From Octopus bimaculoides (Eukaryota), in contig NC_068992.1 in NCBI RefSeq assembly GCF_001194135.2, positions 46,115,122 to 46,171,706 of the forward strand: a stretch of 56,585 bases of DNA, read 5' to 3'. Below, piece after piece: positions 373 to 48,762 of the stretch. A model generated the notes under the pieces. It made no database searches and was not told the DNA's origin. It saw nothing but the letters and a program-made list of their open reading frames with translations. Position numbers and translations under genes: made by a program. Position 1 is the first letter of the stretch. Every line of letters begins with the position of its first letter.

Positions 373-583
373 ATCTTTTACTTGTTTCAGTCATTAGAAT
401 GTGGACATGTTGGGGCACCACCTTGAAGAAATTTTAGTTGAAACTATCGGCCTCAGGATCTATGTTTCGTTAAGCCTGGCACTTATTCAATTAGTCCCTT
501 CTGCAGAACCCCTATATTACAGGGATGTAAACAAACCACCACCAGTTGTCAACTGGTGGTGGGGGACCAACATAGACACAAAG

Positions 584-637
<54 letters not shown>

Positions 638-824
638 GCACATATATATATATGTATACAATGGGCTTTTTCAGCTTTCGTCTCCTACTTCCATTCACAA
701 AACTTTAGTCAGCCTGAAACAATAGTAGAAGACACTTGCCCAAGGTACCACACAGTGGGACTAAACCCAGAACCATATGGTTGGGAATCAAGCTTCTAAC
801 CAGACAGCCACACTTGCAGCTATA
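373..824 (-). mobile_element. SINE family S1 (tRNA-derived head, CORE-like segment, central microsatellite, 3' tail), older copy
   Basis: On the minus strand it has A/B-box-like motifs, then CCTTGGGCAAGTGTCTTCTACTA, a central (CA)n/(TA)n tract and the tail GACTGAAACAAGTAAAAGA. It aligns with the copies at 17358, 42367 and 52647. Confidence 0.8.
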
Positions 825-1026
825 TTTGATTTTTAATTATTTTCTTCATTCGTTTGCAAAAATACAAACATTCTCACACTGATGTGTAATTAATTAATAA
901 CAGTCGTTTAAACCAAATGTGTTATATTAAGAAAATATATGAAACCTTCCCATTACACACAGAGGTAGTTAACACACACCCTCACAAACACAACATCATC
1001 ACCATCACCATCAGCATTGTCCTCCT

Positions 1027-8484: not shown

Positions 8485-8704
8485 ATCATCATCATCATCA
8501 TCATCGTTTAACATCCGCTTTCCACGCTAGCATGGGTTGGACGATTTGACTGAGGACTGGTGAACCAGATGACTACACCAGGCTCCAATCTGATTTGGCA
8601 GAGTTTCTACAGCTGGATGCCTTTCGTAACGCCAACCACTCCGAGAGTGTAGTGGGTGCTTTTACATGCCACCAGCACGAAGGCCAAGTCAGGCGGTACT
8701 GGCC
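8485..8704 (-). mobile_element. SINE family S2 (RTE-type tail with (ATG)n end), young 5'-truncated copy
   Basis: (CAT)n is followed by cgtttaacatccgctttccacgctagcatgggttggacg..ggatgcc..aacgccaacc. It is highly similar to the copies at 45500, 48629 and 56307. Confidence 0.85.
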
Positions 8705-9880: not shown

Positions 9881-10094
9881 TGTTGTTTCTCTAAAGGTGT
9901 AACTGTGCCTAAATGAGAAATTATGATGAATTTTATCTTCCTGGATGAATAAGGTACCAATCAAATACTGGGTACTAATGCTTGCACATTAGAAATACTT
10001 TTCTCGTTAATTGCAGCCGCATCTAAACCGGGTGACCTGAGGTTGTTTAGCAAGTGACCTTGCTTCCAAGCTGACCTCACGCCACAAACATTCA

Positions 10095-10420
10095 CAACAT
10101 TCACAAGAATTCCTAGTGCTGTTAGCAGAGGTATGGTGACACTGCTGAGGAAGGATACCGACAATGGGCACATAGTAGAGAATTTTTGGCCCACAGAGTT
10201 TAATATTTTGACCAAGGTGTCAGTGAAAAGGCTGGTACTTGTTGTCGGTACCCTGGTCAGAGAAACGCAAACATGCACAATCCCTAGCAGGTCTATCCAC
10301 GACAATCTCCACCATATGCAATACATCATAGAGAGGGCTGGGATCACAGCTGGCTTCAGGGATGATCTGATAAATTTGGATCAATCAAAAGCATTCGACA
10401 GGGTCGACCGTCATGTTTTG
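10095..10420 (+). mobile_element. Tx1/L1-clade LINE reverse transcriptase fragment
   Basis: RIPSAVSRGMVTLLRK..NILTKVSVKRL..QTCTIPSRSIHDNL..INLDQSKAFDRVD matches Tx1-type RT domains (QTCxVPGRSIxDN..LDQEKAFDRVDH). Confidence 0.85.
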
Positions 10421-10918
10421 TTTTTGGGTTGATGGAAGGGATTGTACCCCGGGTCTTTGCAGACCCACCAAGATCAAGCACTTTGAGATTCAGAACTAGA
10501 TACCCAATATATAATCATTCTAAAGAAATGCAAACAGATTAAGAATTTTAACTAGTCAAATATTGTGGAGATTGGGGGTAAATTTGTGGGAGGTGTCATT
10601 TTAAAGGAGAAAGAAATTCTCAAATATTTAATTATATCGTTCTCATTTAATATAGTCTTACTTCCTTATATTATGTGGAATTTTGATGGAGAGCTGTCTA
10701 CAAGATCTTTCCATCTATTGTCTTGTTGCTGTTCCAACAGTAGCACTTCATGGCACTGAGGAATGGCAGGTTAAGAAACGATGAAGATGATGATGATTAC
10801 CATAACTTGTCAATGTCAAAGATAGATGAAATTCTATAAAAAGCAATTTTTAATTATGTCTCCAAGTTATGATAAGGTATTTTATGGTATTTAAGTGTCA
10901 GCTGTCATCTTTTATCAG

Positions 10919-16116: not shown

Positions 16117-16519
16117 NNNNNNNNNNNNNNNNNNNNNNNNNNNNNNNNNNNNNNNNNNNNNNNNNNNNNNNNNNNNNNNNNNNNNNNNNNNNNNNNNNNN
16201 NNNNNNNNNNNNNNNNNNNNNNNNNNNNNNNNNNNNNNNNNNNNNNNNNNNNNNNNNNNNNNNNNNNNNNNNNNNNNNNNNNNNNNNNNNNNNNNNNNNN
16301 NNNNNNNNNNNNNNNNNNNNNNNNNNNNNNNNNNNNNNNNNNNNNNNNNNNNNNNNNNNNNNNNNNNNNNNNNNNNNNNNNNNNNNNNNNNNNNNNNNNN
16401 NNNNNNNNNNNNNNNNNNNNNNNNNNNNNNNNNNNNNNNNNNNNNNNNNNNNNNNNNNNNNNNNNNNNNNNNNNNNNNNNNNNNNNNNNNNNNNNNNNNN
16501 NNNNNNNNNNNNNNNNNNN
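16117..16519. other. Assembly gap flanked by (AT)n
   Basis: Run of N. Confidence 0.99.
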
Positions 16520-17357: not shown

Positions 17358-17559
17358 ATCTTTATCATCGTCGACTTCTTTCAGTCCTTAGACTCTGATC
17401 GTGAAAGGGTACTGCCTTGGAGAGTATTCAATTGAATGGATCGACCCCCAGTACTTAATTTTTTAAACATGGGACTTATTATATTGGTCACTTTTCCTGA
17501 ACTGCTAGGTTACAGAAATGTATACAAACCAGCATCAGTTGTCAAGTGATGGTGGGAAC

Positions 17560-17613
<54 letters not shown>

Positions 17614-17780
17614 ATGGGCTTTTTTTTTCAGTTTCCATCCTCCAAATCCACTCACAAGGCTTTTGTTGGCCTGAGGCTAAAGTAGAAGACGCTTGCCCAA
17701 AGTGCCTCACGGTGGGAGAGAACCTGGAACCATGTGCTTGGGCAGTAATCTTCTTACCACACAGCCATACCTGCACCTAT
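17358..17780 (-). mobile_element. SINE S1, near full length
   Basis: Aligns end to end with the copies at 42367 and 52647 and has a central (CA)n. Confidence 0.85.
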
Positions 17781-18186
17781 AAGGTACCTTCAAAAATGAG
17801 TGAAATGAAAACTCCCTTACACAAAAGACAGGCAAGGGTTAATGATAGGAAGAGCAATTGTCCACAGGACTAATGCCTCTGTAACGTATTTGTCTAATTA
17901 AAAGAAATGGATGTAAAATATACAGAGGAAAACTGCCACAAACAATGGATTATGTTATATCTTTGACTTAATGCAGCTACATACAATTGCATTTCTTCTG
18001 TACACAGGAGGTAAATAAATGGATACTGGTTCAACTGTAAGCTTACTTCTGAGGGAAAATAGCAGCCAATCCAGGAGCGGTGGGTTGTCAGTACTACAAC
18101 TGGTCTCTCATTTTAAAACTATGGGAAACAAGGAACCAACATTGCTTTCATGATGGACTTGGAATTGTGAAATTTAAACTATGAAC

Positions 18187-21857: not shown

Positions 21858-22220
21858 CATCATCATCATTTAATTACCATTTACCATGCTGACATGAGTT
21901 GGATGGTTTAGCAGAAGCTGGCAAGTAATAAGACTGCACCAAGCTCTAATGTCAGGTTTTGCATGGTTTTTGCAGCTAGATATCCTTCTTAATGCCAACC
22001 ACTTTACAGCATTTATTGCACCAATAAGAATGGTCATAGCTAGCTGGCTGAAAAATGCACCCAGTACACACTGTAAAGCTGTTAGTGTTGAGAAGGGCAT
22101 CCAGCTAAAGAAACCATGCCAAAGCAGACGTTGGAGTACAATGCAGTCTTTAAACACATTTGATCCTGTCAAAGTATCAAATCTGTGCTGGCATGGAAGA
22201 TGGGCCTTTAATGATGGTGA
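21858..22220. mobile_element. Head-to-head inverted dimer of older S2 copies
   Basis: Arms of about 21870-22010 and 22070-22215 are reverse complements, with a (CAT)n tail on the left and an ATG-type tail on the right. Confidence 0.8.
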
Positions 22221-26089: not shown

Positions 26090-26147
<58 letters not shown>

Positions 26148-26482
26148 AAATGAGTGAGTGTGTGCGAGACAGGTTAACTAGGCAAAGCCCACAACCTTCT
26201 CTAAGCTATACTACTTAGAACAGAAGCTGAATAGTTGAATTCAACTCTCTAAATACTACAAAACAATCAATTTCAGAGAAGTACTTTAATTTTAGTAAGG
26301 AGTTGTTTAGGCTGAACCAGCAAAATGTCAGACAAGAAGACATGAACTGTTTATCCTTTGCAACATTATTATCAGTCTGAATATGTTTAATGCACGTTCG
26401 AACTGGGGAACAAGTTACTCACTGCATTTTGTCACGGAGAATATATCTCACTTGTTGACAAATGGTGTGCCACCTACTTAGA

Positions 26483-26530
26483 CTGTAAAATATTAACATT
26501 TCAGAATAGTTATCTCCTCATCAGTCACAG
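26483..26530 (-). ncRNA. Minimal type I hammerhead ribozyme motif, catalytic core intact
   Basis: The minus strand reads CTGTGA CTGATGA GGAG-ATAACTA-TTCT GAAA TG-TTAA-TA T T TTACAG. Stems I, II and III pair with G-U wobbles and the cleavage triplet is AUU. Confidence 0.75.
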
Positions 26531-26587
26531 ACACTAAGACAAATGGTGTGTATTCACCTAGATCAGCTTGCAGCGCCACCTTAGTGT

Positions 26588-26635
26588 CTGTGATTGATGA
26601 GGAGACAACTATTCCAAAATGCTAACATCTCACAG
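26588..26635 (+). ncRNA. Minimal type I hammerhead ribozyme motif, core mutated (probably inactive)
   Basis: CTGTGA TTGATGA GGAG-ACAACTA-TTCC AAAA TG-CTAA-CA T C TCACAG. The stems are intact and the triplet is AUC, but C3 is U and G12 is A. Confidence 0.7.
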
Positions 26636-28772
26636 TCTAGGTAGGTGGCACTGCGACCTGATCTAGGTGTATACATACTATTTGTCATCAAGTGAGATAT
26701 ATTCTCCATGATAAAATGTAGTGTGTAGCTTGTTCCCCAGTTCAAACGTGCATCAAGCGTGTTTGGACTGTTGATAACATTGCACTTTCAGTTATCAATG
26801 CTTAGTGCTTCTCCTCCATGTTTATCCTTTGTCCAGCAGTGAAGATGGCACAACTGTACATGACACTTACATTATTTTCTTATTCATCAAAATTCCACAT
26901 CTTTCTACATAACTATCACAGCACTTTACTATGATGTTTACATGCAGCAGGAATCATTGGGTGATTTATGCAAATATTTTGTTTGTTTTTTTTGTTCAAT
27001 AATCCAAATACATTGACTTCATTTTTCAAAATTGATCACCTCAACTATAATATAATTGATCAATATCGATTATATCTAGCCATGCTACCCTATACCAACA
27101 TCATATCCTACCACTTTCACATCTTACTGTATCCTCATCATATTTCACTCCATCACACTACAGAACATCACATCCCACCTTACACCCTGCCACACCACAC
27201 CCTTCCTCACTCAGCAACAACCAGTTCCACACTTCCTCATAGTTCAGTTCTTGTTTTAGTGATGATGCTTCTCTCATGCAACTACGTATCCTGAATCACT
27301 GATCAACTGTGTCAATATGAACACACACACACACACACACGTAGACACACAGGTCTTCCATGCAATTTCTGTCAACAAAATTCCATTCACAAGGAATTGG
27401 CTAAATAAGGTAGCAAAGACACTTGTCATGCTCTCATTTCTGGTAACTTCGGTAAATAGTTATTCTTTTATTAAACATGACTAGTCCGGGAATTTTTTGA
27501 CCCCACTTCGTATTTAATCAACTATACTATTTACTTCTTTCTTCATTTATGACTTTGTGTCAAAGTCTCAAATCCATGTATATGAAGCAGTAACAGTATT
27601 ATCAAAACAGAATTTAACAATGTGAATCCACAGTCTACATAAGTCAATTTTGCTTTCAGTGTCAATAAATGAAGACAGCAATATCTTGGACTCAAATTAC
27701 TTGTTTGTACCATCCTCCTAGCCCTTTTGTCTGTGTACTAGCATTGCTGTTACGTAGCCCCAGTTAACCATCTCCAGCAAGCTTTCACTCAAAGACATTC
27801 TAAGTCAATGGTTCTCAACAGCTTTGACATGGCCCTTGGAGGTCCACATATGATTCTGTTGCTAAAGTTTACATGCAATAAATTGGTTATACTTCTGAAA
27901 TACTCAAACTATTTGAAGAAGTTTTTTTTAATAGAATTCCTAATGATATTTAATTACAAAAACATAATGAGAGTTTTTAAACTTCCAATGGTTATGGAAG
28001 TCCAGCAGAGTAAAATATGAATTAAAGGGTTCCATGAGTAAAAAATGTTTGAGAAACACCTTTCAAAATCATCAGCACCATTAAATTATCAAATAATTCT
28101 CTTTCTGAAAGTGGCTTAATGTGATATGAAGAAAATTTGACTAATATTTTATTTGATTACAACAACTTTGATGTCTAATTTTGCCTTCGGCTAAAATCTG
28201 CAGAGAAATCCAACCTACATTTACATCATAGAATATTTAGCACAGTCATGTCACCAAAAACTGGCTTCATGTCTTTGTTGGCAACAACATCTGTTAATTC
28301 ATCACGAGACATTCTTTAGTTTGTAGTGAAAACAATATTTAATTTATAAGAAAGCAGGAATTAAATTCTGATATGCTTCTTTCCAAATAAGTGATCTCCT
28401 GTTGCCTGTAACTTCCGCTATATAAGAGTGATGAACTCTCCAGGCAGTTATTCACTGAACTAAATAAACTCCTAGTTATAAATTTAAACATGGCTAAGCA
28501 TTTAAATCAAAATAAACATATTTAATTTTTCAGTGTATGGTTGCACAATAGATATTAAACAGTTAACTAGCTACAATATTGGTCTTCTAATAAATAGGTT
28601 TTGTGTTCAAATCCACTGAAGGAGTACATCTACGATATATCTGGCACGGGGTAATATTTTTACCTGAAGATTTTTATCTGCATCAGACTAAGATATTTTT
28701 AGAACTGCCTTTCACATTTGTAGTCATTTTTCATCAGTTATCTAATCCTATCTATGTACATGTGCATATCTT

Positions 28773-28960
28773 TTATCTTTCACTCGTTTCAGTCATTAGG
28801 CAGCAGCCATGCTGGGGCACTGCCTTGAAGAATTTTTAGTCAAATGACTCCAGAACTTAATCTTTTTGCCAACCTGCTAAGTTATGGGAACATAAACACA
28901 CCAACATTGGTTGTAAAGTAGTGGTTAGGGACAAACACAGACACAAAGACACACACTAAG
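28773..28960 (-). mobile_element. SINE S1 3' half, running into a microsatellite and gap
   Basis: gtttcagtcatt..gccatgctggggcactgccttgaag..acaccaacattggttgt matches the S1 tail. Confidence 0.75.
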
Positions 28961-29017
28961 ACATATATATATATATATATATATATGAATATATATATAC
29001 ATATATATATATACATA

Positions 29018-29164
29018 NNNNNNNNNNNNNNNNNNNNNNNNNNNNNNNNNNNNNNNNNNNNNNNNNNNNNNNNNNNNNNNNNNNNNNNNNNNNNNNNNNN
29101 NNNNNNNNNNNNNNNNNNNNNNNNNNNNNNNNNNNNNNNNNNNNNNNNNNNNNNNNNNNNNNNN
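29018..29164. other. Assembly gap
   Basis: Run of N. Confidence 0.99.
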
Positions 29165-30268: not shown

Positions 30269-30415
30269 NNNNNNNNNNNNNNNNNNNNNNNNNNNNNNNN
30301 NNNNNNNNNNNNNNNNNNNNNNNNNNNNNNNNNNNNNNNNNNNNNNNNNNNNNNNNNNNNNNNNNNNNNNNNNNNNNNNNNNNNNNNNNNNNNNNNNNNN
30401 NNNNNNNNNNNNNNN
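30269..30415. other. Assembly gap
   Basis: Run of N. Confidence 0.99.
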
Positions 30416-35759: not shown

Positions 35760-36353
35760 NNNNNNNNNNNNNNNNNNNNNNNNNNNNNNNNNNNNNNNNN
35801 NNNNNNNNNNNNNNNNNNNNNNNNNNNNNNNNNNNNNNNNNNNNNNNNNNNNNNNNNNNNNNNNNNNNNNNNNNNNNNNNNNNNNNNNNNNNNNNNNNNN
35901 NNNNNNNNNNNNNNNNNNNNNNNNNNNNNNNNNNNNNNNNNNNNNNNNNNNNNNNNNNNNNNNNNNNNNNNNNNNNNNNNNNNNNNNNNNNNNNNNNNNN
36001 NNNNNNNNNNNNNNNNNNNNNNNNNNNNNNNNNNNNNNNNNNNNNNNNNNNNNNNNNNNNNNNNNNNNNNNNNNNNNNNNNNNNNNNNNNNNNNNNNNNN
36101 NNNNNNNNNNNNNNNNNNNNNNNNNNNNNNNNNNNNNNNNNNNNNNNNNNNNNNNNNNNNNNNNNNNNNNNNNNNNNNNNNNNNNNNNNNNNNNNNNNNN
36201 NNNNNNNNNNNNNNNNNNNNNNNNNNNNNNNNNNNNNNNNNNNNNNNNNNNNNNNNNNNNNNNNNNNNNNNNNNNNNNNNNNNNNNNNNNNNNNNNNNNN
36301 NNNNNNNNNNNNNNNNNNNNNNNNNNNNNNNNNNNNNNNNNNNNNNNNNNNNN
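35760..36353. other. Assembly gap
   Basis: Run of N. Confidence 0.99.
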
Positions 36354-42070: not shown

Positions 42071-42366
42071 AAGTACATGTAGGGAATTTCATTCTTGATC
42101 TTGGATTGCCTGCTTTGATGTCATCACTGGGTCACGGGAATCCTTGCTTTAAGTGAGTTCACTTAATTGTAAGATTTTAAGGTGGGTCTCTGGTCTGAGG
42201 ATAACTTCCATCTTTTCACATCTGACCAACCATCATCGTCATCCTCACTACCATCATCATTACTGTCATCTTTCTTTTCCTCAGAATCCTTCTCTGCTTG
42301 CACCATTAAAAAGTAAAAAAAAAAAACACTTCAGAGGAAGAGATAACAACCAACACTAAATATATA

Positions 42367-42538
42367 CTCTTTACTCTTTTACTTGTATCAGTCATTTGAC
42401 TGCGGCCATGCTGGAGCACCGCCTTTAGTCGAGCAAATCGACCCCAAGACTTATTCTTTGTAAGCCGCTAAGTTACGGGGACGTAAACACACCAGCATCG
42501 GTTGTCAGGAGATGTTGGGGGGACAAACAGACACACAA

Positions 42539-42576
<38 letters not shown>

Positions 42577-42760
42577 CTATATATATACATATATAAGACG
42601 GGATTCTTTCAGTTTCTGTGTACCAAATCCACTCACAAGGCTTTGGTCAGCCCGAGGCTATAGTAGAAGACACTCGCCCAAGGTGCCATGCAGTGGGACT
42701 GAACCCGGAACCATGTGGTTGGTAAGCAAGCTACTTACCATACAGCCACTCCTGCTCCTA
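42367..42760 (-). mobile_element. SINE S1, young full-length copy
   Basis: CpG-rich, with intact A/B boxes, central (CA)n(TA)n and (AAAGAGT)n-type tail. Near-identical to 52647-53054. Confidence 0.9.
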
Positions 42761-42869
42761 TATGTCATAGTTTATTTTAATTACTACAAATTTAACATAA
42801 ATCATCCATACATCTAACTCTCTTCCCCTCTTCTTGTCTCTCTACTCTTGCACAGTTACAGTATTTCTT

Positions 42870-45191: not shown

Positions 45192-45499
45192 CGCATCCAG
45201 ACATTTTTGGATAATACAAGTGAGAACTGGGTGCCATGTAAGACAAGCTGGTCTGAAAAGTAATTAGCAGCCTTTGGCTAAGGCACTCTCCTTCCTTCAC
45301 ATGTCATACACCAACATAGCTAAATACACCATACACAAGGCTACAAATTGGGGTGATTAAAGTCAACTATAACCATCTGTATATAATATACTTGATGCGT
45401 ACACGTTGCTATAGCATAGCTCAGTTGCTACAGTACTTTTGCTGAGACAACATCGGTTATAGACTTGCTGTACTAGAAACGCAATAAAAACCATCATCG

Positions 45500-46095
45500 T
45501 CATCATCGTCATCATCGTTTAACGTCCACTTCCATGCTAGCATGGGCTAGACAATTTGACTGAGGATTGGTGAACCGGATGGCTACACCAGGCTCCAATC
45601 TCATTTGGCAGAGTTTCTACAATTGGATGCCCTTCCTAACGCCAACCACTCCGAGAGTGTAGTGGGTGCTTTTATGTGCCACTGGCACGAAGGCCAGTCA
45701 GGTGNNNNNNNNNNTTTATGTGCCACTGGCACGAAGGCCAGTCAGGTGGTACTGGCAACGGCCATGCTCAAAATGGTGTATTTTACGTGCCACCTGCACA
45801 GGAGCTAGTCCAGTGGCACTGGCAACGATCTTGCTCAAATGTCTTTACATGTGCCATCTGGCACAAGTGCCAGGAAGGTGACGCTGAGCACAGGTGCTAT
45901 CACGATTTCACTTCTGCTTGCCCCAACAGGTCTTCGCAAGCCGAGTTTAGTGTCCATTGAAGGAGACGTTGGTATGGGTGCCGGTCGTCGAATTTAGTTC
46001 GATTTTGATTTCACTTGCCTCAACAGGTCTTCGTAAGCGGAGTTTAGTGTCCAATGAAGGAAGGTACGCATAAGTGGGCTGGCTACACCCCTGGC
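45500..46095 (-). mobile_element. Longest S2 copy, with internal tandem units and a 10-N gap
   Basis: S2 tail, repeated ~63-bp ttttacgtgccac..ggcaacg units, and a duplicated ~55-bp gatttcact..caacaggtcttcg..gagtttagtgtcca segment. Confidence 0.85.
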
Positions 46096-46809: not shown

Positions 46810-47097
46810 NNNNNNNNNNNNNNNNNNNNNNNNNNNNNNNNNNNNNNNNNNNNNNNNNNNNNNNNNNNNNNNNNNNNNNNNNNNNNNNNNNNNNNNNNNN
46901 NNNNNNNNNNNNNNNNNNNNNNNNNNNNNNNNNNNNNNNNNNNNNNNNNNNNNNNNNNNNNNNNNNNNNNNNNNNNNNNNNNNNNNNNNNNNNNNNNNNN
47001 NNNNNNNNNNNNNNNNNNNNNNNNNNNNNNNNNNNNNNNNNNNNNNNNNNNNNNNNNNNNNNNNNNNNNNNNNNNNNNNNNNNNNNNNNNNNNNNNN
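46810..47097. other. Assembly gap between (AT)n and (AC)n
   Basis: Run of N. Confidence 0.99.
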
Positions 47098-48325: not shown

Positions 48326-48628
48326 GTGAGGAGGAAGATGGAGTGTGAAAGGTAAAGATATAGCAAGTAACGGGCTTAAAGATAGGTAAAAGATGGATAT
48401 GAAAGGAGTCACCAGGTGCAAACTAAATTCATTGAATAGTCTACAAACAATGACTGGAAAGTGAGAGATTTTTTTCAAAAGAGCACTTCATTTCCGCCAG
48501 GTAACAACTGAATGATAGATAGCATAGGATTAAATCTTAAGGCCAGGATGGTATAAAAGATACAGTATGGCATCTAAGGAAAAACATATTTGAATGTTCA
48601 ATCCAGATAAGCGATGGGAACAGAGAGC

Positions 48629-48762
48629 ATCATCAACATTGTTTAACGTCCGCTTTCCAAGCTAGCATGGGTTGGACGATTTGACTGACGACTGGTGAAC
48701 CAGATGGCTACACCAGGCTCCAATCTGATTTGGCAGAGTTTCTACAGCTGGATGCCCTTCCT
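48629..48762 (-). mobile_element. SINE S2, young truncated copy
   Basis: Near-identical to the copies at 8485 and 56307. Confidence 0.85.

What the first reader, a model, noticed from the sequence alone, without database searches (positions are those of the whole stretch)
26359..26784. Palindromic element carrying two back-to-back hammerhead ribozymes
Seen: a 426-bp inverted repeat with a 48-nt hammerhead near the centre of each arm, one per strand, both reading outward. Comparing the arms suggests the ancestor CTGTGA-CTGATGA-GGAG(ATAACTA)TTCC-GAAA-CGTTAACG-TC-TCACAG, with several differences at CpG positions. Established: minimal type I hammerheads with a very short, self-complementary stem III occur in the terminal repeats of Penelope-like elements and retrozymes and typically cleave as dimers; PLE terminal repeats can be inverted. 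Inferred: this is a non-coding PLE/retrozyme-like unit. A transcript from either strand would carry one ribozyme and could also fold into a ~190-bp duplex. Because the two motifs are on opposite strands, they cannot form the usual cis dimer, so activity would need a monomer fold or trans dimerisation. It may be an undescribed cephalopod ribozyme-bearing palindromic family.
Basis: partly seen in the sequence, partly recalled or inferred. Interest (0 to 1): 0.9.

Follow-up and report, generated by a model that had tools for sequence, protein, structure and literature searches.

The report
Decayed head-to-head hammerhead retroelement pair
Two old, mutated copies of a short hammerhead-ribozyme-carrying retroelement sit head-to-head and form a 426-bp palindrome; this layout is already known for Penelope-like elements and retrozymes, so it is a real but fairly ordinary genomic fossil.

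Summary
Bases 26359-26784 form an imperfect inverted repeat: 85% identity over 179 alignable bases, with a 25-bp deletion in the left arm. Each arm carries one 48-nt type I hammerhead motif, on opposite strands and reading outward.

The minus-strand copy (26530..26483) is the only sequence in the window that fits a strict hammerhead descriptor; 300 shuffles gave no hit. The plus-strand copy (26588-26635) has two inactivating core changes, C3U and G12A.

The motif is the canonical metazoan type I form: a 6-bp helix I, a 4-bp helix II, and a 3-bp helix III with a palindromic tetraloop. This is the form found in non-LTR retrozymes, not the minimal form found in Penelope-like elements (PLEs).

The palindrome is asymmetric. 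The right unit (247 nt) places its hammerhead at the tip of a 149-nt hairpin. The left unit is cut off 7 nt upstream of its hammerhead.

I read this as one complete and one 5'-truncated copy joined head-to-head, 3' ends outward. That is a documented PLE insertion pattern. The arms differ mostly by transitions (24 of 27), and 9 differences are CpG-type.

I found no second copy, no tandem array and no RT/GIY-YIG ORF. No Rfam hammerhead model matched. A palindromic family and a cephalopod origin remain untested. It is a new member of a known kind, of modest interest.

The parts
26359..26784 (.). Whole imperfect palindrome: two head-to-head units with their 3' ends outward
   Evidence: As RNA it folds into one long hairpin: -257.1 kcal/mol, z = -21.9. 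GC is 39.7%.
26538..26784 (+). Right unit, 247 nt, apparently complete: rcX - TAGTGT - hammerhead - TCTAGGT - X - A
   Evidence: My dissection. GC is 42%.
26538..26581 (+). Central 44-nt segment (rcX). It is the 5' arm of the long closing stem of helix I of the plus hammerhead and is the only unpaired-in-symmetry piece of the palindrome.
   Evidence: pair I3: 86% complementary to 26643-26686, 6 of 44 differences.
26588..26635 (+). Plus-strand type I hammerhead relic: CTGTGA-TTGATGA-GGAG-ACAACTA-TTCC-AAAA-TGCTAACA-TC-TCACAG. Core changes are C3U (26594) and G12A (26616). The former cleavage site lies between 26629 and 26630.
   Evidence: It needs 2 core mismatches in the relaxed descriptor. It is the top hit, full length, of a model built from four published retrozyme hammerheads: 14.0 bits, E about 0.09.
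26643..26686 (+). Segment X, the 3' arm of the closing stem
   Evidence: pair I3. The stretch 26538-26686 folds as a 149-nt hairpin: -77.8 kcal/mol, z = -11.8.
26687..26784 (+). Segment A, the 98-nt 3' tail of the right unit. It contains a 14-bp hairpin (26738-26751 / 26757-26770).
   Evidence: -29.5 kcal/mol, z = -3.5 against mononucleotide shuffles.
26359..26537 (-). Left unit, 179 nt, truncated at its 5' end: TTAGTGT - hammerhead - TCTAAGT - X with a 25-nt deletion - A
26483..26530 (-). Minus-strand type I hammerhead with an intact core: CTGTGA-CTGATGA-GGAG-ATAACTA-TTCT-GAAA-TGTTAATA-TT-TTACAG. G10.1-U11.1 is a wobble pair and H17 is U. The predicted cleavage site lies between 26489 and 26488.
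   Evidence: It is the only strict-descriptor hit in the window, against 0 in 300 shuffles. Model R1 gives 11.5 bits, E about 0.5, full length. The hammerhead fold costs +2.0 kcal/mol, against an MFE of -4.0.
26457..26475 (-). Left copy of X with a 25-nt internal deletion between short CAC repeats
26359..26456 (-). Left copy of segment A (98 nt)
26356..26359 (.). CTTT, a possible target-site duplication (left copy; the last T overlaps the first base of the palindrome)
   Evidence: A 4-nt flanking match with +/-1 slack has a chance frequency of about 4.5%, so this is weak evidence.
26785..26788 (.). CTTT, a possible target-site duplication (right copy)

Best explanation
This is a fossil of one retrotransposition event of a short, non-coding, hammerhead-bearing retroelement of the PLE / non-LTR-retrozyme kind.

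The unit, about 250 nt of RNA, has a canonical type I hammerhead. Its helix I is closed by a roughly 44-bp stem, and a 98-nt structured tail follows.

Two copies lie head-to-head with their 3' ends outward. The right copy is complete (26538-26784). The left copy is truncated 7 nt upstream of its hammerhead (26537..26359).

The most likely origin is target-primed reverse transcription from nicks on both target strands. Each cDNA would start at the RNA's 3' end, and the two 5' ends would meet in the middle.

Since then each arm has drifted by roughly 9%, mostly through transitions and CpG decay. The drift killed the plus ribozyme (C3U, G12A) and weakened the stems of the minus ribozyme. One 25-bp slippage deletion also occurred.

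Today the locus most likely has no ribozyme function. Any read-through transcript would form a long hairpin.

What is shown: the sequence anatomy, the match to the hammerhead descriptor, the decay pattern and the folds. What is inferred: the retroelement nature, integration by priming on both strands, and past self-cleavage.
For: 1. Hammerhead identity. The strict descriptor hits once in 113 kb of both strands, at the minus copy, and 0 times in 300 shuffles. All conserved core residues are present. The two arms together imply an ancestral G10.1-C11.1 pair (TTCT|GAAA versus TTCC|AAAA, both derivable from TTCCGAAA).

2. Retrozyme-type architecture. Helix I is 6 bp, helix II is 4 bp, and helix III is 3 bp plus a palindromic tetraloop. 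An internal loop and a closing stem lie beyond helix I. The published coral and mussel retrozyme hammerheads have the same layout (supplement of PMC7229834).

3. Independent model. A covariance model built only from four published retrozyme hammerheads ranks the two copies 1st and 3rd in the window, full length and in register.

4. Unit properties. The unit is 247 nt, GC 42% and highly self-paired. This fits the published range of 170-400 nt, GC below 45-50%, 'highly self-paired' (PMC7229834).

5. Head-to-head layout. This matches the 'inverted 5'-truncated copy adjacent at the 5' end' described for PLEs (PMC8557442). It also matches paired hammerheads on opposite strands 100-700 bp apart (PMC4209133). 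A purified PLE protein nicks and extends both target strands in vitro (PMC11167929).

6. Age. The three X copies differ from one another about as much as the arms do (6/44 versus 27/179). This fits a single time of origin.

7. Flanks. CTTT flanks both ends, which is weak support.
Against: - No Rfam hammerhead family matches either copy, even at E <= 10 on a 62-nt slice.
- The scores from my own model are marginal (E about 0.09 and 0.5).
- No other copy of the unit was found anywhere. There is therefore no family consensus, no covariation and no evidence of mobility.
- No RT or GIY-YIG coding remnant lies within about 2 kb, and none was seen among the window's long ORFs.
- There is no tandem arrangement, which is the defining layout of non-LTR retrozymes.
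- The central segment can also be read as a direct repeat of X upstream of the minus hammerhead. This locus alone cannot exclude that reading.
- The flanking 4-nt repeat has about a 4.5% chance expectation.
Confidence: 0.6

Rival explanations
1. A single solo unit (26538-26784) was inserted first. Later, a local inverted duplication copied its hammerhead-X-A part to the left, for example by replication template switching or fold-back repair. On this view the palindrome is not a product of integration.
For: The final structure is identical to what is observed. The junction lies immediately next to a sequence able to form a strong hairpin, the kind of place where fork switching occurs. The flanking repeat is weak evidence for a single event.
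Against: Divergence between the arms (15%) is about the same as between the two X arms inside the right unit (14%). A duplication would therefore have to be nearly as old as the insertion. Head-to-head truncated copies are a known regular outcome of PLE integration (PMC8557442), so no extra event is needed.
Confidence: 0.2
2. The palindrome is a MITE or foldback-type DNA transposon whose arms happen to contain a captured hammerhead-bearing fragment.
For: The inverted repeat runs nearly the full length. The termini are sharp (TGCAAC...GTTGCA), and there is a possible short flanking duplication. Below-threshold hits to miRNA hairpin families in Rfam reflect the long hairpin shape of the locus.
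Against: There is no second copy in 56 kb, whereas two other repeat families each occur about 5 times. From my own knowledge, a 3-4 bp CTT(T) duplication and these termini do not match the usual MITE superfamilies. The central asymmetry equals a piece of the unit itself, which is what truncation of a retro-copy would give.
Confidence: 0.08
3. One reading: the palindromic form is itself the unit of an undescribed ribozyme-bearing family, and its hammerheads act as monomers or as dimers in trans.
For: Nothing excludes more such loci elsewhere in the genome. The minus copy keeps an intact core.
Against: The evidence is a single locus. One ribozyme is dead. The other ribozyme's hammerhead fold is unfavourable: +2.0 kcal/mol against an MFE of -4.0. 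In a full-length transcript the ribozyme is buried in a duplex of -257 kcal/mol. The arms are unequal in length at their 5' ends, as expected for independent truncation.
Confidence: 0.07
4. The hammerhead-like motif is a chance match inside an unrelated palindrome.
For: No Rfam hammerhead hit. The scores from my own model are marginal. The isolated 48-mers do not adopt the hammerhead fold as their MFE structure.
Against: None of 300 shuffles of the whole window gave a strict-descriptor hit. Features not required by the descriptor also fit: the ancestral G10.1-C11.1 pair, the palindromic helix III, and the internal loop plus closing stem beyond helix I.
Confidence: 0.03

Closest known systems
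Metazoan non-LTR retrozymes (Cervera & de la Pena 2020, PMC7229834)
   Same: Both have a canonical type I hammerhead: a 6-bp helix I, a 4-bp helix II, and GAAA followed by a short helix III with a palindromic loop, then UC. Both have an internal loop and closing stem beyond helix I. The unit size of about 250 nt, the low GC, the non-coding sequence and the high self-pairing also match. The helix III layout equals that of the cloned coral unit Amil224.
   Different: Retrozymes are defined by head-to-tail tandem repeats. Here there are two inverted copies and no tandem. No circular RNA evidence is available. The sequence is unrelated to the published examples apart from the ribozyme core.
Penelope-like elements: pseudo-LTRs with hammerheads, and the 'inverted 5'-truncated copy' structure (PMC8557442, PMC4209133, PMC11167929)
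   Same: Truncated copies lie head-to-head with their 3' ends outward. The hammerhead sits a little over 100 nt from the 3' end of the copy. Paired hammerheads on opposite strands 100-700 bp apart have been reported. An extra piece of some 40 nt is present on one side only, reminiscent of the 30-40 bp 'tail'.
   Different: There is no RT/GIY-YIG ORF nearby. The hammerhead is not the PLE minimal type: helix II is 4 bp rather than 6-8, there is no bulge after A9, and helix III has a loop. The nearest microsatellite is about 210 bp away, not at the junction.
MITE-derived or hairpin-RNA loci (long inverted repeats that give small RNAs)
   Same: The locus is a perfect-hairpin-like inverted repeat of about 190 bp. 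It draws sub-threshold hits to miRNA-precursor models.
   Different: All hits are far below the gathering scores (70 versus 110 bits). There is no copy-number or small-RNA evidence. The arms are retro-copy-like, with unequal 5' ends.

Membership tests
Hammerhead ribozyme, type I | Conserved core: C3 U4 G5 A6 N7 G8 A9, G12 A13 A14, the A15.1-U16.1 pair, and H17 | tested here: met
   The minus copy 26530..26483 has every core residue. The plus copy fails at C3 and G12. Both failures are single transitions, and the G12A change lies at an inferred CpG.
Hammerhead ribozyme, type I | Three helices around the core with helix I open; a G10.1-C11.1 pair; a short palindromic helix III | tested here: met
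   Helix I has 6 of 6 pairs and helix II has 4 of 4, with wobble pairs in the minus copy. TTCC in the plus copy preserves C11.1. Helix III is 3 bp plus a tetraloop.
Hammerhead ribozyme, type I | Match to the curated Rfam covariance models | tested here: not met
   There is no hammerhead family at the gathering score in the window. There is none at E <= 10 on 551 nt or on 62 nt. A model built here from 4 published retrozyme hammerheads gives only 14.0 and 11.5 bits.
Hammerhead ribozyme, type I | Self-cleavage at the predicted site | not testable with these tools
   This needs in vitro transcription or RNA end mapping. Thermodynamics suggest the present copies are poor: the hammerhead fold is +2.0 kcal/mol for the minus copy.
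Hammerhead ribozyme, type I | Covariation in the helices across family members | not testable with these tools
   No further copies could be retrieved. With only two arms, only C-to-U changes giving wobble pairs are seen.
Metazoan non-LTR retrozyme | Canonical (not minimal) type I hammerhead | tested here: met
Metazoan non-LTR retrozyme | Unit of about 170-400 nt, low GC, non-coding, highly self-paired | tested here: met
   The right unit is 247 nt with GC 42%. It has a 149-nt hairpin (z = -11.8) and a 14-bp hairpin in the tail. It has no Pfam match and no protein homologue.
Metazoan non-LTR retrozyme | Head-to-tail tandem repeats, dimers to multimers | tested here: not met
   There are only inverted copies. 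No direct repeat of the unit appears in the repeat finder, TRF or self-BLAST.
Metazoan non-LTR retrozyme | Expression as linear and circular RNA | not testable with these tools
   No transcriptome data are available.
Penelope-like element (PLE) | ORF with a telomerase-like RT and a GIY-YIG endonuclease | tested here: not met
   Stop-free stretches of at least 40 aa between 24.5 and 28.3 kb have no RT or GIY-YIG match in Pfam. The only RT-like piece in the window is a weak RVT_1 fragment at 10058-10429, 16 kb away.
Penelope-like element (PLE) | Terminal repeats that may be inverted; an inverted 5'-truncated copy abutting the 5' end | tested here: met
   The units lie head-to-head with unequal 5' ends and their 3' ends outward. 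The feature is as described in PMC8557442.
Penelope-like element (PLE) | Minimal hammerhead: helix II of 6-8 bp, helix I of 4-5 bp, an extra nucleotide between A9 and 10.1, and little or no loop 3 | tested here: not met
   Helix II is 4 bp, there is no bulge, and helix III has a tetraloop. A minimal-hammerhead descriptor finds nothing in the window.
Penelope-like element (PLE) | A 30-40 bp 'tail' present at one end only; insertion into microsatellites | tested here: inconclusive
   The one-sided 44-nt central segment could be analogous, but it lies at the 5' junction. The nearest microsatellite, (AG)n at 26093-26147, is about 210 bp away.
MITE / foldback DNA transposon | Terminal inverted repeats, a fixed-length target-site duplication, and many copies | tested here: inconclusive
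   The inverted repeat is trivially present. CTT(T) flanks have 4.5-14% chance expectation. No second copy exists in the window, and genome-wide copy number is not testable here.

The most novel reading that the evidence does not exclude
The palindromic arrangement may be a recurrent product rather than a one-off. In that case a retrozyme-like family in this genome would regularly yield inverted pairs. Their read-through transcripts would be long hairpin RNAs. These could be substrates for small-RNA production or for A-to-I editing, and could feed back on the hammerhead-bearing family itself. The ribozyme might cleave co-transcriptionally, before the antisense arm is made.
Probability: 0.06. 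Interest if true: 0.6.

Novelty: new member of a known kind. Interest (0 to 1): 0.27.

Why it matters
If the source is a cephalopod, this would add one more lineage to those carrying canonical type I hammerheads of the retrozyme kind. I found no description of these in cephalopods in the literature I could search. The locus also shows such a unit in the head-to-head layout typical of PLE integration. That fits the recent proposal that animal retrozymes are non-autonomous PLE derivatives (bioRxiv 10.64898/2026.07.22.740005). As a single decayed locus it does not test any open question by itself. Its practical value is as a seed sequence for a genome-wide census.

Tried and rejected
- **Rfam.** The whole window at gathering thresholds gave no hits. 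Permissive searches of 551 nt and of 62 nt gave no hammerhead family. They gave only sub-threshold miRNA-hairpin hits, explained by the long hairpin, and weak C/D-box snoRNA hits, explained by UGAUGA plus CUGA.
- **More copies in the window.** BLASTN of one arm with word size 7 found none.
- **More copies elsewhere.** An exact-pattern scan for TGATGAGGAGAYAACTATTCY found 4 hits in metagenome contigs, none followed by GAAA and unrelated in sequence, so I take them as chance. It found 0 hits in viral contigs.
- **Translated search.** I searched the 68-aa stop-free antisense frame of the right arm against 5.8 billion proteins, hoping to fetch other copies through called ORFs. No candidate was found.
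- **Coding potential.** The arms have no Pfam match, and I saw no sign of coding constraint when I compared the two arms' translations by eye.
- **Organism.** The RT fragment at 10058-10429 has only three unnamed Logan relatives. One is on a 2.2-kb contig of run SRR11869391, which no held paper mentions. The source organism therefore remains unknown.
- **MFE folding of the isolated 48-mers.** This does not return the hammerhead fold. That is uninformative for small hammerheads, so I scored the fold explicitly instead.
- **Relaxed descriptor.** It gives 7 start sites against about 2 expected. The five extra ones each have two core mismatches and no other hammerhead features, so I rejected them as noise.
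- **PMC522041** (Penelope endonuclease paper) is not held.
Full report
**1. What is there**

Bases 26359-26784 form an imperfect palindrome. The repeat finder reports three collinear inverted pairs: 111 nt at 83%, 72 nt at 88%, and 44 nt at 86% complementarity. When both arms are read outward they align over 179 positions with 27 mismatches (85% identity) and one 25-nt gap in the left arm.

The window has 33.5% GC and a CpG observed/expected ratio of 0.29. It is full of microsatellites and assembly gaps. It looks like a CpG-depleted, hence probably methylated, eukaryotic genome (my inference). I could not identify the organism.

**2. Anatomy**

The palindrome is not symmetric. Reading the plus strand, it contains:

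| Coordinates | Content |
|---|---|
| 26359-26456 | rcA |
| 26457-26475 | rcX with a 25-nt deletion |
| 26476-26482 | 7-nt linker |
| 26483-26530 | reverse complement of a hammerhead |
| 26531-26537 | 7-nt linker |
| 26538-26581 | a single rcX |
| 26582-26587 | 6-nt linker |
| 26588-26635 | hammerhead |
| 26636-26642 | 7-nt linker |
| 26643-26686 | X |
| 26687-26784 | A |

The simplest reading has two units. The right unit is rcX-hammerhead-X-A (247 nt). The left unit, on the minus strand, is hammerhead-X-A and breaks off 7 nt upstream of its hammerhead.

In the right unit, rcX and X pair. The hammerhead therefore sits at the tip of a 149-nt hairpin (-77.8 kcal/mol, z = -11.8). Its helix I (6 bp) is followed by an internal loop (UAGUGU / UCUAGGU) and a long closing stem. 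Segment A has its own 14-bp hairpin.

An alternative reading cannot be excluded from one locus. In it, the central segment is a direct copy of X upstream of the minus hammerhead. That reading would leave the minus hammerhead without a closing stem.

**3. Are these hammerheads?**

The minus copy reads CUGUGA-CUGAUGA-GGAG-AUAACUA-UUCU-GAAA-UGUUAAUA-UU-UUACAG.

It satisfies a strict type I descriptor: 6 of 6 pairs in helix I, CUGANGA, 4 of 4 pairs in helix II, GAAA, U16.1 and H17. It is the only such site on either strand of the window. None appeared in 300 dinucleotide-preserving shuffles.

The plus copy has UUGAUGA and AAAA, that is C3U and G12A. It is found only when two core mismatches are allowed.

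The arms differ at TTCT|GAAA versus TTCC|AAAA. This is the signature of two independent decays of one CpG, and it implies an ancestral G10.1-C11.1 pair next to G12.

For helix III the ancestor could be UGUUAACA (2 changes needed) or CGUUAACG (6 changes, all at CpGs). Either way it gives A15.1-U16.1 plus two more pairs, closed by the palindromic tetraloop UUAA.

**4. Database models**

No Rfam hammerhead family matches. This holds at gathering scores, at E <= 10 on 551 nt, and at E <= 10 on a 62-nt slice around the intact copy.

As an independent test I took four hammerheads from published retrozyme clones (coral Amil224, mussel Mg353, axolotl Ax353 and Ax330; supplement of PMC7229834). I aligned them, built a covariance model and scanned the window with filters off.

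| Copy | Rank | Score | E-value | Alignment |
|---|---|---|---|---|
| Plus | 1st | 14.0 bits | about 0.09 | full length, in register |
| Minus | 3rd | 11.5 bits | about 0.5 | full length, in register |

The 2nd-ranked hit is a truncated local match. This is supportive but marginal. The model rests on only four sequences, and both targets are decayed.

**5. Which kind of hammerhead?**

The architecture matches the canonical metazoan type I hammerhead of non-LTR retrozymes. It has a 6-bp helix I and a 4-bp helix II. GAAA is followed by a short helix III with a palindromic loop and then UC. An internal loop and closing stem lie beyond helix I.

The coral clone has the same helix III layout (GAAAC-AGUACU-GUC). 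The hammerhead of that cloned monomeric copy is reported to self-cleave efficiently (PMC7229834).

It does not match the minimal hammerhead of PLEs, which has a long helix II, a short helix I, a bulge after A9, and little or no loop 3 (PMC4209133). A descriptor for that type finds nothing in the window.

**6. State of preservation**

Of the 27 differences between the arms, 24 are transitions and 9 are plainly CpG-type. The K2P distance is 0.18, or about 9% per arm.

The hammerhead fold of the minus copy now costs +2.0 kcal/mol, against an MFE of -4.0. The CpG-restored ancestor gives -6.3 for the same fold.

A transcript across the whole locus folds into one hairpin of -257 kcal/mol, which would bury the ribozyme. 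I conclude that the locus is a fossil.

**7. How it arose**

The hammerheads read outward, so both outer ends are 3' ends and the two 5' ends meet at about 26537/26538.

[quoted passage not shown] It is also the arrangement reported as paired hammerheads on opposite strands 100-700 bp apart in Schistosoma mansoni (PMC4209133).

A purified PLE protein nicks and extends both strands of its target in vitro (PMC11167929). I infer that this explains head-to-head pairs; the paper does not say so. A 2026 preprint argues that animal retrozymes are non-autonomous PLE derivatives (10.64898/2026.07.22.740005).

The three copies of X differ from each other about as much as the arms do (6/44 versus 27/179), which fits one time of origin. 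CTTT flanks both ends, but the chance expectation is about 4.5%.

**8. What is missing**

- No other copy of the unit in the window.
- No relatives in the metagenome or viral collections.
- None by translated search.
- No tandem repeat.
- No RT or GIY-YIG remnant within about 2 kb.

Family-level conservation, covariation, copy number and expression therefore could not be tested. The local-duplication and MITE rivals stay open at low probability.

**9. Verdict**

The interpretation as a PLE/retrozyme-like non-coding unit is supported. The claims of a new palindromic family, of a need for dimerisation and of a cephalopod origin are not supported by anything I could test. The arrangement is already known, so novelty is limited to a new member of a known kind.

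Noticed in passing
window 374-838, 17374-17781, 28769-29007, 42360-42776, 52646-53061 (minus): A dispersed repeat family of about 400-450 bp with an internal (CA)n/(TG)n tract. The five copies are 68-79% identical and look SINE-like. ARAGORN finds no tRNA in the window.
   Followed up: partly
window 8485-8703, 45496-45702, 48628-48762, 56305-56523, 22053-22136 (minus): A second dispersed repeat family of about 210 bp. The five copies are 77-97% identical. There is also a short local re-duplication at 45748-45800.
   Followed up: partly
window 10058-10429 (+): A stop-free 124-aa stretch with a weak RVT_1 match (16.8 bits, below the Pfam cut-off) and an NLDQSKAFDRV-like motif. It is probably a decayed non-LTR (LINE-type) reverse transcriptase. 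Its only relatives are three unnamed Logan contigs, one from run SRR11869391.
   Followed up: partly
window 26584-26787 (minus) and 26311-26534 (plus): The strand antisense to each hammerhead unit is free of stop codons for 68 aa in the right arm. In the left arm it is free for 56 and 48 aa on either side of the deletion. It has no Pfam match and no homologue among 5.8 billion proteins, and its differences look mostly non-synonymous by eye. I take it to be chance.
   Followed up: yes
window 26359-26784: The two arms differ by 24 transitions and only 3 transversions (8:1). Only 9 of these are visibly CpG-type. The excess may reflect doubly decayed CpGs. Another possibility is editing or reverse-transcriptase error in the RNA templates. 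This was not resolved.
   Followed up: no
window 26481-26637, both strands: Rfam miRNA-precursor models score well below their gathering cut-offs: MIR4371 at 70 and 60 bits against 110, plus mir-4477 and MIR8742. The scores appear to come from the long hairpin geometry. The E-values are not meaningful for a palindrome.
   Followed up: yes
window 16117-16519, 29018-29164, 30269-30415, 35760-36353, 45705-45714, 46810-47097: Six runs of N (assembly gaps). Most are flanked by (TA)n or (CA)n microsatellites, which suggests gaps caused by simple repeats.
   Followed up: no
window 26093-26147: An (AG)27 microsatellite lies about 210 bp upstream of the palindrome. PLEs are reported to favour microsatellite targets, but this one is not at the junction.
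   Followed up: partly
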